Assembly (NCBI RefSeq): GCF_964204865.1
Contig: NC_135260.1
Span: forward strand, 14,756,001-14,820,000
Source: Styela clava
Taxonomy: Eukaryota
Length of the DNA: 64,000 bases
Direction: 5' to 3'
The notes beneath the pieces were generated by a model. That model was not told the origin of the DNA. It searched no databases and worked only from the letters and a program-made list of their open reading frames with translations. Below, in pieces: positions 5,330 through 11,300 of the stretch. Position 1 is the first letter of the stretch; each line of letters begins with the position of its first letter. A program made the position numbers and the translations under genes.

Positions 5330-8300
5330 ATGCTTCGTAGCAGGATTTCGAGTTTTCTGGTAAGAAGATTTATATAGATTTCTTAGTAATTGCTTTAATC
5401 AGGATAATAATTTCACATAAAGATAGGGTAGTATCTGTACCTACCAGCTTTGCAGTGTGTCATAAATATGGCAAAGTATCATATATTATATATATATATA
5501 TATAAAGTAATCAACGAATTTCATTCTGATAATGGGTGTGAAATGACATTTTATTTTTTCCAGATTAACCATGGAAGAAATCCAATTAGAAATTTTTCAG
5601 CAAATCCAGCGGTGGTATGTATATTCATTGCTACTATAGGATAAGATAGGATTCACATAGGTACCCTGGGGCGGAGGAAAGTCGATAAGAAGGCTTATTC
5701 GTATGGCGTACCACGGACTCTCGTTTGGTTACCAGCCCATTTCGGGTATGGGATAAGTTAGCCAGTTATTTGTTTCAGATCATGGATTTGATGGTGAAGG
5801 AAGCCGTATCCGACCAGCGGGTACGTGAACCACCCTACGGAGGCGAGGAGTCTGGCAATCCTATTGCACATAATTATTAGGGATTTAAACCTGCGAATCC
5901 ACGCTTTTAATCATCATTGTAGAATATATGGGCATAATAGACTTTACTAAAGCGACACAAGTTTAGTACAAGACCATCCTCTAAAACGAGATGGGCTCAT
6001 CCCACAGATTTATATTTAATAAACACGGCAAATTCTGACCTCTAAGTGAATAGTATCATTTATAATACTGTGGAACAAACGGCTTATAAAGTATGAGCGC
6101 ACAAACGAAATCAACATTTTTCTTCTTATACACAGCGCGGAAGGAATCCAGTTCGGAGCATTTCGGCGAATCCTACGCTTGTAAGTTTATTGCTATTCTA
6201 CATTTTCGGGGTCAAGCATATACGTTTCTAATCGTCCTAATATTTCATTTTATACACTCGTTTGTAAGGATGTGCAATCATACAAGTGGAAAGATTTTCA
6301 ATGAATAAGGTTATATATACGATATTCCCGTAATTTATTCTTGATACTGGATGATAAAAATTAATATCAATCAGTTTATGCCAAAAAACCATCCACGTAA
6401 CTAAAGCATGGCTCTAGGTCGGATCAGTGGTTCATCTTCAATTTTTAATTTTATTCGTGGTATTGATTTGCAATTCGTGCCGGAGAACTATCCGCGTATA
6501 AATAAAGAAAGTAACCCGAAAGGAAGCTCTCGTGACTTTTAAAATCATCCGTGATTAATTGATTTTCATTTCCTTGGAGCCATGCAAGACATTGCTACTA
6601 CTATACGATGAGGTCATTTGGGACAAATATTTTATTTTGGTGGAATTTGAGGTATTTACAGCGACGATTTTCAGATTTCGATTCAAGCCCCAACCCGACA
6701 AACAATCATCGACTCTAACTTTAAAACTTGAAAATATCTGGCTATCCCCGGAGAGTAATAAAATGGATGACATATCTTACTATGCTTACTAGTTCCGGAA
6801 ATTCGACTTTGTGCGGGGCGTAATTGCCTTAATTAATGCCTATCTCAAATAATCGCTTTAATGCCTTTTTTATGTGGCGTTTTTACACCTTTACTCCTTA
6901 TAAAGCTACAATGAAGCATCCACTATTCCCTTCTAGAAAGGTCGGAATCTCCTCGATTCGGCACCTAGTCACGTTCAACGAGTTTATCACAAGGCATTTT
7001 AAATCTGAACTAATAGACTAAGAAAATTTTTGGGTACTTCAAACATGCAACACTCTTACACCATGCGGGTATATTAAGTAATAACATTTAAGTAATAACG
7101 GAGAACTTCATCATACCGCGCCGAACATTTGGTCACGTCCAACGCGTATATCACAAGGCATTTTAAATACTTTAAATCTGAACTAATAAATTGAGGAAAT
7201 TTTTGGGTGCTTCAGACATGAAACACTCTACAGCTCCATATACGGATATATTAAAAAATAAAGAAGACTTTTGTGGACGCAATAGGTACAAAAATGTACA
7301 CAAATTTATTTTTTCAGATACAGCCAAGGAGACAACCAATTAAAAAGTTTGAGGAAATTCCTACCGTGGTAATTTTATTTATATTTTAAATTTTAATCTG
7401 AGTGCGCTATAGGAGTATACCGAACTTTAGTGGAGTACAAGAAGATAGTTTTATTCAACACTTTCACTGACTCGAGATGAGCTCACCCTATACATTCCTA
7501 AGAAAACCAGCAATATTCATTTGAGTTAAGGTAGCCGGACAACTATTAGTAATATTTTTATATATGATTAGCGATATATATACATAAAAAGACCCCTTCA
7601 ACAAATCCGTCAATGGTAATCTCATTTTCATAGTTTCTTCTGTTTTATAATTGTATATATATACAAATGCCAGCAAAATGGTGTGTATGCTGACCAGACT
7701 AAAATTAAAACAAATTACATGACGGCGCAAACCTATAAACTTTAGTGAGATTATTCTTTATATATATCTAGATTTATTGAATAATATTATAGATGAGATT
7801 GGTTTTAGTCTGATAATCATAACTAATCAAGAGATTATAAACTTATTCAGTAAATGCCAATTCTTAATGTATGGAATAAAATTGGCGAATATAATAATTT
7901 CTGGCGCCCAAATATCTTTTGAGAGCGCCAAGATGAAGTATATATATATAAATTTCGATTTTGCAATATGGGAATCTAAGGAATTGTTGAATCTCCCAGG
8001 GACTACTAAGAAGCAATCAAGTCAGAGCCATTTCAACAAACCCAGCGTTGGTAATTTCATTATCATTTATAAGCTTTGATTTTTGAGAAATCTAGTATAT
8101 ATATGTTTTACATTTTTATATCGTGGATCGATTGTTCATTTCCTACTTTCATTCACTGAACGAACGCGAGTTCGTGCGATTGCATTAATCAATTTTGGGG
8201 TAACTGTCAAAACTGATTATAGCGAAGACGAACACAATTAATAGAAACATGTCAGTGATCGTTTATGACTTGACTTTTTGATTTCTTTAACTTCTTCACC

Positions 8301-11300
8301 TAATCCTAACACCGTCTTGAAGATCTATCTGTACAAATGACACATATGGAATAAACACATATCAAAACATATTTGCATATGGAACTCTAACTAATGAGCT
8401 TGACAACCGACTTCTTTGTTTCAGAATTTAAAAGAAGATAGCGAGGAATGTCCAGTATCTTCCTACAACGAATGGGATCCATTAGAAGAAATTATTGTAG
8501 GAAGAGCCGAGGGACTTACTGTTCCAAACTTAACTGTAGACATTAAGGTAAATAATATGCGACCGTTTACACTGAGCAGGAGGATATATTTCAATTGAAT
8601 GTAATTTACTGGCAGCGATGTAGATCGTCGGACTTTAGACTGCGTGGGCATTCGTCCTTCTAAGAATTTTGAGAGAGGTCTCCATTCTTGTTATAATTGG
8701 TTACCATAACATCATCAGATGTGTTTGCATACGAAGGTGTAAATTTATGTTTGACTGCATAATTTTGAAGAAAAAATGTGCCATAGTAATACGTTGTACT
8801 TGTATCATAATATTTGTTTGAAAGCCCGAATGAATTGAACCCTTTTTAACGCAAAATTGCAATTGAATTATTTTTTCAGTCGATTGTATCCGAGGAGCAT
8901 TGGGATTTCTTTCAAAGAGATGCAGGCAAACCTTTCCCCGAAAAATATGTACAAAGAGCAATCAGAGAAGTTGAAGAGTTTTGCAATATCTTGCGCCGAG
9001 AAGGAATTGTCGTTCGCCGTCCAGATATTGTAGATTGGGCAAAAGTATGCGAGACGCCTGACTTTAAAACTGCAGGTAAAACCATTAAAAAGCATTAAAA
9101 AAAATTTTTTTAATGCACTCTAGTGCGCAATAATCTATACATAAGTGATTTTTATTCTTTTTGTAAACATATATATTTATTTTAACTATCAGTTGAGGTT
9201 ACGCAAGACTAACTACCTTTCCTATGCCTTTGTGGAAGTGGAAGTTCTTGCACTGCCCCCAATTTTATTTCTCTATATTTGAAAACAAATTCAACAATTG
9301 CTAACCATTATTTATGTGCATGTCATCGCGTTACCATAGTCATCATAGTTTAAAAAGGCTTGTCTGAAGAAGTCTGAACCTGGTCAGACGAAACGTTACA
9401 GAAATGCATTTGTGTTAGTGCAAAGAAAGACTCTTGAAACAGTATAATCATTTTAGATGTCAGATTAAATCTTTAAAATCTTCGTCATCACAGCATCTAT
9501 ACTTTCCTTAAACAAATTCAATTGTACTTGTTCCATGAGAAGTCCTGAATAAAAATACTACAAAATTTTGTAAACTTGACGATGAGGAAATTTAATATAG
9601 GGTAGAACCAAATTAAAATGACCTCACTTGAAATTAAATTCAATATCTGCTACAATTAGACGACAAAACTTAGAGCCTAGTTAAAAATGAATTGACGTTG
9701 ATAATTCTTTTCAATATTTTATATTCAATCTCCAGCGTCGTCTATCTGCATTTCCCCTATTCTAACTTCGAATATTTATTTTCAGGTCAAGGTTCAGCTA
9801 TGCCTAGGGATTTGCTCATCGTTTTTGGGGACGAAATTATCGAAGCACCAATGGCGTGGCGTTCAAGATTCTTTGAATATCGAGCTTACCGTAGCATTGT
9901 GAAAGATTATTTCAGACGCGGAGCTAAATGGACAACAGCACCAAAGCCACTAATGAGCGACGAGCTTTATGATTCTGTGAGTATCGTTTGCAAATTTTAT
10001 CATGATCCAACTTTCATAATAGAATATATATATTATAGAGCTGTGGTTCCCAACCTTTTTTTCAATAGACCCCAAATTAGAATTTTTTTTTTGTAAAATC
10101 TAGCGACCCAAGAACATGCTCAAATAAATACTAAACGACATGTCGTACTTTCATGGCCATTAATTCCCCCATAAATTACCCCAATGTGAGAAGGCAGCGC
10201 TTGTTTGCCATCGGCGAGTTTTTGAAATGGTGGCGTGGATTCACTTAGCAAAATGAATGATGCTAAGTTTTTTACACATTGATACTTCCCTCATATACAA
10301 TCACTACACTTCAATAGCAAATATAAAATAAACAATAAAATTTATTAGAAAATAATATTAGTAACCTTTAGATTTTTGTTGAAAAAAACAAGCGACTCAA
10401 GAAAATTTTCAGTCCAAGTTTTGGGTCGCGGCCAATTGGTTGGGAAACACTGTGAAAGAGCACATCATGAAAATCAATACCATTTCTTAAAGGAACGTTG
10501 AGTTATGCAAAGCAGCTTTTAGCTGAAATCACTAGCTCAATTATTTTACACCGCCCTCCTAGGGAGTACAATTTCCAGCACACCAAAATTTTTGTTTTGA
10601 AAATGGCTTGAAAACATCTAGAATACAAAACATACAAATGCATGCTCAAATGTGATATGGTGGCTCAAAGTCCGGTACATGCAAATCCAATGGATCACAT
10701 TCGAAATTTATGAGGCGGGTGTTTGGGTAGGTCAAAACGCATTTTGTCTCAATTTATTCGATTTTTTATATATTGATGTTTATGTTCTATATTTTGATAG
10801 AATTATCCAGTGGGAGATACAGAAGAATCCGAACGTATGACAAGACAAGGAAAATTTGTCGTCACTGAATTTGAGCCATGTTTCGATGCTGCTGACTTCA
10901 TGAGAGCTGGAAAAGATATATTTGCACAACCAAGTCAAGTAAGTAGATGAATGTTTTGTAGGCTGTAATATTAGACATTGAAAAAATTTACAACTTACAT
11001 ATTATTCCGATTCTCTCAACAAGGGTTTGCCTGCTTGTATAAAGCTAGACTGTTCTATATATGTGTATTCTAAGTCTAGTCCAAAATGTGTTTTTGTTTG
11101 AATTCCAGGTGACTAATTTTATGGGCATTGAATGGATGAAACGACATTTGGAGCCGAAAGGATACAAAATACATATCGTAACTTTCAAGAATGCAAACCC
11201 AATGCACATTGATGCTACTTTTAGCATTGTTGGGCCAGGACTTGTAATTGTTAACCCAGCAAGACCATGTTATCAGGTATTTGCCCATATTCAAAAGATT

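What the first reader, a model, noticed from the sequence alone, without database searches (positions are those of the whole stretch)
5564..8050. Tandem array of duplicated microexons encoding alternative mitochondrial presequence/cleavage modules in GATM
Seen: between exon 1 ([10 protein letters not shown]) and the first catalytic-domain exon lie four homologous phase-0 exons of 51, 45, 51 and 51 nt: [49 protein letters not shown] and [17 protein letters not shown]. All have AG/GT boundaries and no stops, and their downstream intron flanks are also similar. None is recognisable as such from the ORF track. Established: R-x-[F/L/Y]|S is the R-3 mitochondrial processing motif (MPP plus Icp55/XPNPEP3). 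Copies 1, 2 and 4 carry IRNF|S, VRSI|S and VRAI|S. Inference: any subset can be spliced in frame, giving a combinatorial or mutually exclusive cassette that tunes presequence length, import efficiency or the mature N-terminus of the first enzyme of creatine synthesis.
Basis: partly seen in the sequence, partly recalled or inferred. Interest (0 to 1): 0.88.

Follow-up and report, generated by a model that had tools for sequence, protein, structure and literature searches.

The report
Repeated microexons in GATM presequence
In the sea squirt Styela clava, one copy of the creatine-pathway enzyme GATM has an N-terminal (probably mitochondrial) address tag built from four tandem copies of one tiny exon; they are normally all spliced in together and only sometimes skipped, and the exons and isoforms are already in RefSeq, so this is a neat but modest curiosity.

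Summary
Four homologous phase-0 microexons lie between a 10-codon first exon and the first catalytic exon of a GATM gene: 5564-5614, 6136-6180, 7318-7368 and 8000-8050. All have AG/GT borders. The genome is Styela clava.

RNA contigs from four runs of one study join the exons in series, 1-2-3-4, in the dominant transcript. They are therefore not mutually exclusive. One run also shows copy 1 joined to copy 3, skipping copy 2.

RefSeq already annotates the exons and five isoforms: all four, minus c2, minus c4, minus c2 and c4, and in an older release minus c1. Copy 3 is in every isoform.

The two Styela paralogues have the same 10-codon exon 1 but only one short exon 2. This gene therefore amplified its exon 2. 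A decayed fifth copy lies at 7593-7630.

Copies 1, 2 and 4 keep an R-x-[F/I]-S-[A/T]-N-P core although their synonymous sites are saturated. The 76-residue extension is basic and is predicted disordered.

Best reading: a long, internally repeated presequence with up to three candidate processing sites, all included by default and occasionally skipped. Import and cleavage are inferred, not shown. No paper describing this was found. The scan had noted nothing like it on other DNA.

The parts
5330..5359 (+). Exon 1 coding part: ATG plus 9 codons, ending in phase 0. It carries two Arg and a phi-x-x-phi-phi (I-S-S-F-L) Tom20-type motif.
   Evidence: The junction to copy 1 is seen in RNA contigs of X3 and X4. 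Homologous 10-codon first exons exist in both paralogues.
5564..5614 (+). Microexon copy 1 (51 nt, 17 codons, phase 0), containing R-N-F-S-A-N-P.
   Evidence: It is skipped in the older RefSeq isoform X3 (P0324).
6136..6180 (+). Microexon copy 2 (45 nt, 15 codons), containing R-S-I-S-A-N-P. It is a cassette exon.
   Evidence: The c2-c3 junction is in all four runs. Skipping (c1-c3) is seen in X3 and in RefSeq X2/X4.
7318..7368 (+). Microexon copy 3 (51 nt). This is the diverged copy: K-K-F-E-E in place of the R-x-[F/I]-S-[A/T] core. It is present in every annotated isoform.
   Evidence: Junctions on both sides are seen in all four runs. It has the highest nonsynonymous divergence from the other copies.
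7593..7630 (+). Probable decayed fifth copy: the 3' half of a unit plus a donor-like GT. It is out of frame with the nearest AG and is not used in RNA.
   Evidence: It is the best non-self nhmmer hit in the 64-kb window, at E 0.055. It is 80% identical to 8032-8066 over 35 nt (family D5). No junction uses it. Marginal evidence.
8000..8050 (+). Microexon copy 4 (51 nt), containing R-A-I-S-T-N-P. It has the weakest polypyrimidine tract and is a cassette exon in RefSeq.
   Evidence: Junctions c3-c4 and c4-e6 are in all four runs. It is skipped in RefSeq X3/X4. T8048C is a synonymous variant seen in the RNA.
8425..8547 (+). First exon of the conserved amidinotransferase domain (41 codons). Its acidic start marks the end of the basic extension.
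   Evidence: It is 57-64% identical to the same exon of the two paralogues.

Best explanation
This is the most divergent of three GATM (L-arginine:glycine amidinotransferase) paralogues of Styela clava.

The ancestral gene layout, kept by the other two paralogues, is a 10-codon exon 1, one short phase-0 exon 2, then the catalytic exons. Exon 2 encodes the basic segment with an R-x-hydrophobic motif just ahead of the mature enzyme. In this gene, exon 2 was tandemly duplicated to four working copies plus one decayed relic.

The normal mRNA includes all four copies. That gives a 76-residue, net +11, disordered N-terminal extension. It consists of a targeting head from exon 1 followed by three R-x-[F/I]-S-[A/T]-N-P modules (c1, c2, c4) and one degenerate module (c3).

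Inferred mechanism: the extension is a matrix-targeting presequence. MPP, followed by an Icp55/XPNPEP3-type trimming step, can cut at one or more of the modules, and the last module sets the mature N-terminus. Because every unit is phase 0 and a multiple of 3 in length, occasional skipping of c1, c2 or c4 gives shorter presequences with fewer sites.

Shown: exon reality, homology, serial inclusion, c2 skipping, single-copy paralogues, and selection on the motif. Inferred: mitochondrial import, which sites are cut, and any regulatory use of the skipping.
For: - **Exons and homology:**
- **Gene identity:** the solved AGAT structure is matched at 2e-32. The catalytic Asp254/His303/Cys407 and the binding residues are kept.
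- **Serial splicing:** junctions e1-c1, c1-c2, c2-c3, c3-c4 and c4-e6 all have GT..AG. c2-c3, c3-c4 and c4-e6 are seen in all four runs. One X4 contig class at depth 389 carries all of them.
- **c2 skipping:** a c1-c3 junction appears in X3 at contig depth 56, against 210 for c1-c2.
- **RefSeq isoforms:** 444, 429, 427 and 412 aa, equal to all four, minus c2, minus c4 or c1, and minus c2 and c4.
- **Paralogues:** the C2 and C5 copies have a 10-codon exon 1 plus a single exon 2 of 27 or 21 codons.
- **Purifying selection after an old duplication:** c1-c2 has pS 0.77 against pN 0.18 (Fisher p 0.0008). c2-c4 has 0.75 against 0.27 (p 0.006).
- **Motif stability:** the motif residues are unchanged between two haplotypes that differ at 6 of 76 extension residues.
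- **Composition and disorder:** 13 basic and 2 acidic residues. The first acidic residue is at position 54. There are three R-x-[FYLI]-[SA] sites and one phi-x-x-phi-phi motif. Residues 1-82 have pLDDT below 50 and no secondary structure.
- **Motif definitions:** taken from PMC8847149.
Against: - No import or cleavage predictor (TargetP, MitoFates) and no experiment was available, so mitochondrial targeting and the cleavage positions are inferred from composition and motifs only.
- Two of the three motifs have Ile at the -1 position. Ile is listed in the plant ICP55 consensus but not in the yeast/mammal Y/L/F set.
- Each unit contains one or two Pro, which limits helix length. Only exon 1 looks like a Tom20-binding element.
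- The c1-c4 comparison shows no excess of synonymous change (pS 0.32, pN 0.31).
- Contig depths cannot quantify isoform ratios. Exon 1 and c1 are not covered in runs X1 and X2, so a different 5' end in those samples is not excluded.
- The RefSeq isoforms lacking c1 or c4 are model predictions that I could not verify from reads.
Confidence: 0.7

Rival explanations
1. Neutral expansion. Presequences tolerate insertions, so the duplicated units and their occasional skipping are selectively irrelevant. On this view the skipping is splicing noise from very short exons with mediocre splice sites. Only exon 1 and one cleavage site matter.
For: The extension evolves fast: 6 of 76 residues differ between two haplotypes, against 1 of 368 in the enzyme. 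Copy 3 has lost the motif and a fifth copy has decayed. c1-c4 shows pN about equal to pS. Presequence-internal tandem repeats arose independently in other GATM-like proteins: P0110 has 5 x 8 aa with R-Q-L-S-T, and P0255 has 2 x 20 aa, while their near relatives have one unit. This suggests such repeats are easily tolerated. The all-inclusive form dominates.
Against: c1-c2 and c2-c4 have saturated synonymous sites but retain 8-9 of 15 residues, including R, [F/I], S and N-P. This argues that at least these three units are individually constrained. The motif residues are invariant between haplotypes.
Confidence: 0.2
2. Regulated combinatorial cassette. Splicing chooses subsets of the modules to set presequence length, the processing site used and hence the mature N-terminus or its stability, or to shift the balance between mitochondrial and cytosolic enzyme.
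For: Five in-frame combinations are annotated in two RefSeq releases. Skipping of c2 is confirmed in one run but not seen in another that covers the same junctions (X3 against X4). Only motif-bearing units are ever skipped, while the motif-less c3 is constitutive. The motif units are under purifying selection.
Against: The major transcript contains all four. Every isoform keeps exon 1 and at least one motif unit, so no isoform obviously lacks targeting. The sample identities of the runs are coded, so no tissue pattern can be read. Gnomon isoforms can combine introns that never co-occur.
Confidence: 0.1
3. Mutually exclusive exon cluster: one and only one of the four homologous exons is used per mRNA.
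For: Tandem homologous exons of equal phase and nearly equal length are the classical substrate of mutually exclusive splicing (PMC9013439).
Against: Junctions c1-c2, c2-c3 and c3-c4 exist at high contig depth. c2-c3 and c3-c4 are in all four runs. RefSeq X1 has all four, and no annotated isoform has only one.
Confidence: 0.01

Closest known systems
Vertebrate GATM/AGAT mitochondrial precursor (solved structure 1JDW; otter protein P0196 used here)
   Same: Same enzyme family, with all catalytic and substrate-binding residues kept. It has an N-terminal basic extension with a hydrophobic-R-x-F motif shortly before the conserved [10 protein letters not shown] start of the fold.
   Different: Vertebrate and other ascidian (Ciona, Phallusia, Clavelina) N-termini have no internal repeat: self-repeat score 31 or less, against 32-60 for the isoforms of this gene. 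The vertebrate motif R-T-F-Q-S-T-Q-A-A-T fits the -10R (MPP + Oct1/MIP) pattern of PMC8847149. The Styela units have Asn where that pattern needs T/S/G.
The two Styela clava paralogues (C2: P0187; C5: P0186)
   Same: Same 10-codon exon 1, a phase-0 short exon 2 carrying R-L-I-S or R-L-V-H, then the same first catalytic exon.
   Different: They have one exon 2 only. Their enzyme part is 77-79% identical to otter GATM, against 66% for this gene. This gene has the longest branch in the tree.
Tandem exon duplication with alternative splicing (mutually exclusive or cassette exons; e.g. Ivanov & Pervouchine 2022, PMC9013439)
   Same: Homologous exons in tandem, same phase, and in-frame alternative use.
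   Different: The default here is inclusion of all copies, i.e. repeat expansion of the protein. The duplicated unit is a 15-17-residue piece of a targeting peptide, not part of a folded domain.
Presequences with -3R processing (MPP then Icp55/XPNPEP3), and presequences cut twice by MPP such as Neurospora Su9 (the latter from my own knowledge, not checked here)
   Same: R-x-[F/Y/L/I] followed by S/A and then S/T, as defined in PMC8847149. More than one candidate site in a long presequence.
   Different: The sites here are homologous copies on separate exons. Actual cleavage has not been shown.
Other GATM-like proteins with repeated presequence units (P0110, P0255; sources not named)
   Same: Tandem repeats inside the N-terminal extension. 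The P0110 unit carries R-Q-L-S-T, again a -3R-type motif.
   Different: Unrelated unit sequences and lengths (8 and 20 aa). The P0110 protein runs unbroken from the repeats through the first conserved segment and into non-conserved residues, which suggests a single genomic exon. Its DNA could not be fetched.

Membership tests
L-arginine:glycine amidinotransferase (GATM/AGAT) | Sequence similarity to AGAT of solved structure across the fold | tested here: met
   The exon 9788-9991 matches 1JDW/1JDX at 2e-32. The full RefSeq protein P0322 is 66% identical to otter GATM over 359 residues. Pfam ADI-superfamily hit PF02274.
L-arginine:glycine amidinotransferase (GATM/AGAT) | Catalytic Cys407, His303 and Asp254, and binding residues Asp170, Asp305, Arg322 and Ser355 (human numbering; residue roles from my own knowledge of Humm et al. 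1997) | tested here: met
   All are conserved in the alignment with the 423-residue otter protein.
L-arginine:glycine amidinotransferase (GATM/AGAT) | Amidino transfer from arginine to glycine | not testable with these tools
   An enzyme assay is needed. With three paralogues, the acceptor specificity of this divergent copy is open.
Cleavable mitochondrial matrix presequence | N-terminal, net positive, nearly free of acidic residues, not part of the fold | tested here: met
   13 basic and 2 acidic residues in 76, with the first acidic residue at position 54. pLDDT is below 50 with no secondary structure for residues 1-82.
Cleavable mitochondrial matrix presequence | Amphipathic helix / Tom20 phi-x-x-phi-phi element | tested here: inconclusive
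   One phi-x-x-phi-phi match (I-S-S-F-L, residues 6-10). The maximum hydrophobic moment of 1.92 is similar to the paralogues and to otter GATM. AlphaFold predicts no helix. No dedicated predictor was available.
Cleavable mitochondrial matrix presequence | MPP/Icp55 (-3R) motif R-x-(F/Y/L/I) then (S/A)(S/T) | tested here: met
   Three matches: R-N-F-S, R-S-I-S and R-A-I-S, against the definition in PMC8847149. Ile at -1 is in the plant consensus only.
Cleavable mitochondrial matrix presequence | Import into mitochondria and removal of the peptide | not testable with these tools
   Needs localisation, an import assay or N-terminomics.
-10R presequence (MPP + Oct1/MIP octapeptide) | R-X then F/L/I-X2-T/S/G-X4 before the mature N-terminus | tested here: not met
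   The fourth residue after the MPP site is Asn in c1, c2 and c4. The otter sequence does fit the pattern.
Mutually exclusive exon cluster | One and only one exon of the cluster in each mRNA | tested here: not met
   c1-c2, c2-c3 and c3-c4 junctions are in the RNA contigs. RefSeq isoforms carry two to four units.
Tandemly duplicated cassette exons | Homologous adjacent exons of the same phase, each a multiple of 3 in length | tested here: met
Tandemly duplicated cassette exons | Junction evidence for both inclusion and skipping | tested here: met
   For c2, inclusion is seen in all runs and skipping in X3. For c1 and c4, skipping rests on RefSeq models only and was not seen among the listed junctions.

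The most novel reading that the evidence does not exclude
The array is a regulated splice-coded selector of processing sites. By including or skipping motif-bearing units around a constitutive motif-less spacer (c3), the animal would make GATM proteoforms with different mature N-termini. For example, c3 with its two Glu would be kept on the enzyme when c4 is skipped. The result would be different stability, sub-mitochondrial fate or import rate in different tissues or stages.
Probability: 0.12. Interest if true: 0.7.

Novelty: new variant of a known kind. Interest (0 to 1): 0.4.

Why it matters
If the units are functional processing modules, this gene is a natural experiment. One enzyme would be delivered with one, two or three copies of the same cleavage module and a variable presequence length. 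Mitochondrial-import researchers could use it to ask how site multiplicity and presequence length affect import and N-terminal maturation. It also shows that tandem exon duplication can lengthen a targeting peptide, whereas the usual case is a mutually exclusive choice.

The practical weight is limited. The exons and isoforms are already in RefSeq and the major mRNA simply contains all four. Similar presequence repeats seem to arise and be tolerated in other lineages.

Tried and rejected
- **Mutually exclusive splicing:** rejected by the serial junctions.
- **Extended segmental homology of the introns:** blastn between the five introns found only an internal ~165-nt tandem repeat in the c2-c3 intron. 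The by-eye similarity at about 5990 and 7476 is not significant.
- **The motif in the paralogous loci:** no copy of the unit was found by pattern or tblastn. Their real exons 1 and 2 were located only after RefSeq proteins were obtained. My first guess for the C2 start (an ATG at L004 7348) was wrong.
- **Orthologues of this paralogue in other ascidians:** searches with P0057, P0033 and P0218 gave nothing closer than the animal's own paralogues and P0188, at 67-68% identity. Copy number in relatives is therefore unknown. This may reflect database coverage.
- **The N-terminal fragment search:** it returned mostly single-exon metagenome fragments and no fragment of this gene.
- **Literature:** searches for GATM or amidinotransferase with ascidian, tunicate, Ciona or Styela clava, and for presequence with tandem exon duplication, found nothing on this.
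- only one read-laying run was allowed. The missing 5' coverage in X1/X2 and the 4 unlisted junctions could not be followed up.
- **Spliced model:** I did not build or search a joined model from the window. Exons were searched singly by reference. The full-length proteins analysed are database entries returned by the tools.
- **Human entries:** human GATM entries (e.g. P0028) appeared in hit lists. They were printed with the other N-termini in the listing and scanned for self-repeats, then not pursued. The otter protein served as the vertebrate reference.

Full report
**What is in the sequence**

The + strand carries a short first coding exon at 5330-5359: ATG plus nine codons, with a GT donor at 5360. 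Four small exons follow at 5564-5614, 6136-6180, 7318-7368 and 8000-8050, of 51, 45, 51 and 51 nt. Each is preceded by AG, followed by GT, open, and in phase 0. The next exon is 8425-8547, which begins the conserved amidinotransferase fold.

Copies 1, 2 and 4 share the core R-x-[F/I]-S-[A/T]-N-P. Copy 3 has K-K-F-E-E at the same place.

**Gene identity**

The gene is a GATM. One downstream exon matches the solved human AGAT at 2e-32. The full protein keeps Asp254, His303, Cys407 and the binding residues.

**Is the similarity more than chance?**

- Of the 30 open AG...GT segments of 36-63 nt in the interval, and apart from truncated sub-segments of c1 and c3, the four exons score 31-55 against each other. 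Everything else scores 19 or less.
- A nucleotide profile of the four units finds only one further candidate in the 64-kb window. It lies at 7593-7630, inside the array, and is a half-unit with a donor-like GT (E 0.055). It is out of frame and unused, and is probably a dead fifth copy.
- Introns beyond the first ~20 AT-rich bases are not detectably similar.
- Synonymous sites between c2 and c1 or c4 are saturated (pS 0.75-0.77), so the duplications are old.
- Nonsynonymous divergence is much lower (pN 0.18 and 0.27; Fisher p 0.0008 and 0.006). This indicates purifying selection on at least these units.
- c1-c4 shows no such contrast, and c3 is the most diverged.

**Expression and splicing**

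Four small runs from one study hold the gene as contigs. They behave as RNA. Intron-free contigs at depth 200-400 carry GT..AG junctions through the whole gene, against intronic contigs at depth 2-10.

| Junction | Runs showing it |
|---|---|
| e1-c1 | X3, X4 |
| c1-c2 | X3, X4 |
| c2-c3 | all four |
| c3-c4 | all four |
| c4-e6 | all four |
| c1-c3 (skips c2) | X3 only, one contig |

- In X4, all five serial junctions (e1-c1 to c4-e6) carry the same contig depth, 389.
- The c1-c3 contig in X3 has depth 56, against 210 for c1-c2.
- Contig depth is only a rough guide.
- Exon 1 and c1 are uncovered in X1 and X2.
- Four junctions were not listed by the tool.
- The read tools were single-use, so these gaps remain.
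- Two synonymous variants sit at exon ends, C5357T and T8048C.

**Database context**

Named hits whose contig lengths equal those of this assembly identify the genome as Styela clava. The 90% cluster of P0218 holds nine RefSeq proteins from two annotation releases.

| Form | Length | Protein ids |
|---|---|---|
| All four units | 444 aa | P0322, P0326 |
| Minus c2 | 429 aa | P0320, P0218 |
| Minus c4 | 427 aa | P0319, P0323 |
| Minus c1 | 427 aa | P0324 (older release only) |
| Minus c2 and c4 | 412 aa | P0321, P0325 |

Copy 3 is in all of them. The exons and their alternative use are therefore already annotated. The array is a default-inclusive cassette set, not a mutually exclusive cluster.

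The isoforms lacking c1 or c4 are model predictions that I could not confirm.

**Origin**

The genome has three GATM loci. The C2 and C5 paralogues each have a homologous 10-codon exon 1 and a single short phase-0 exon 2 of 27 and 21 codons, carrying R-L-I-S and R-L-V-H. The same first catalytic exon follows. The window's gene therefore amplified its exon 2.

This gene is the most divergent copy: 66% identity to otter GATM, against 77-79% for the other two. It has the longest branch, inside a weakly supported tunicate clade.

No closer orthologue was found in the protein collection. Ciona, Phallusia and Clavelina GATMs have unrepeated N-termini.

Among about 290 GATM-like N-termini inspected, two others show internal tandem repeats. 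P0110 has five 8-residue units containing R-Q-L-S-T. P0255 has two 20-residue units. Their near relatives have one unit. Presequence repeats in this enzyme family therefore recur.

**Likely function**

The 76-residue extension has these properties:

- 13 basic and 2 acidic residues, the acidic ones both in c3.
- One phi-x-x-phi-phi element, in exon 1.
- Three R-x-[F/I]-S sites.
- pLDDT below 50 for residues 1-82.

By the motif definitions in PMC8847149, the sites fit the -3R pattern (MPP then Icp55). Ile at -1 is attested for plants only. The sites do not fit the -10R octapeptide pattern, which the vertebrate GATM sequence does fit.

Between two haplotypes the extension differs at 6 of 76 residues, against 1 of 368 in the enzyme, yet no motif residue changes.

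I therefore read it as a long, internally repeated matrix presequence with up to three candidate processing sites. Skipping shortens it. Import and cleavage are inferred.

**Rivals**

- Neutral repeat expansion with splicing noise (0.2).
- Regulated combinatorial use (0.1).
- Mutually exclusive use, which is refuted.

- Human GATM hits were not pursued.

**Verdict**

This is a new variant of known kinds (tandem exon duplication, -3R presequence) and is of modest interest.

Noticed in passing
window 5640-5850: A ~210-bp dispersed repeat (SINE/MITE-like) sits in the intron between copies 1 and 2. There are at least 1,971 first-look candidates in the genome, and the 40 that were scored are 82-85% identical. 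RNA contigs pile up on it at depth above 2,000 with many loose ends, so the family is widely transcribed or embedded in many transcripts.
   Followed up: partly
window 9230-9428: A second intronic stretch has very high summed contig depth (470-680) and loose ends at 9381 and 9420 in all four runs. It is probably another expressed repeat family.
   Followed up: no
window 6968-7261: A local tandem duplication of about 165-175 nt (78-92% identical blocks) lies inside the c2-c3 intron. It is unrelated to the microexons.
   Followed up: partly
L004 (G000:C2:7385000-7394999) and L005 (G000:C5:11137988-11147987): Two further GATM paralogues of Styela clava. Each has a 10-codon exon 1 and a single short exon 2. 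An older RefSeq protein (P0185) is only 77% identical to the current C5 protein, which suggests a very divergent haplotype or a fourth copy.
   Followed up: partly
P0110 and P0255 (protein hits, sources unnamed): Independent tandem repeats inside the N-terminal extension of other GATM-like proteins. P0110 has 5 x 8 aa with R-Q-L-S-T, and P0255 has 2 x 20 aa. Their closest relatives (P0127; P0224/P0257) have one unit.
   Followed up: partly
I did not examine it.
   Followed up: no
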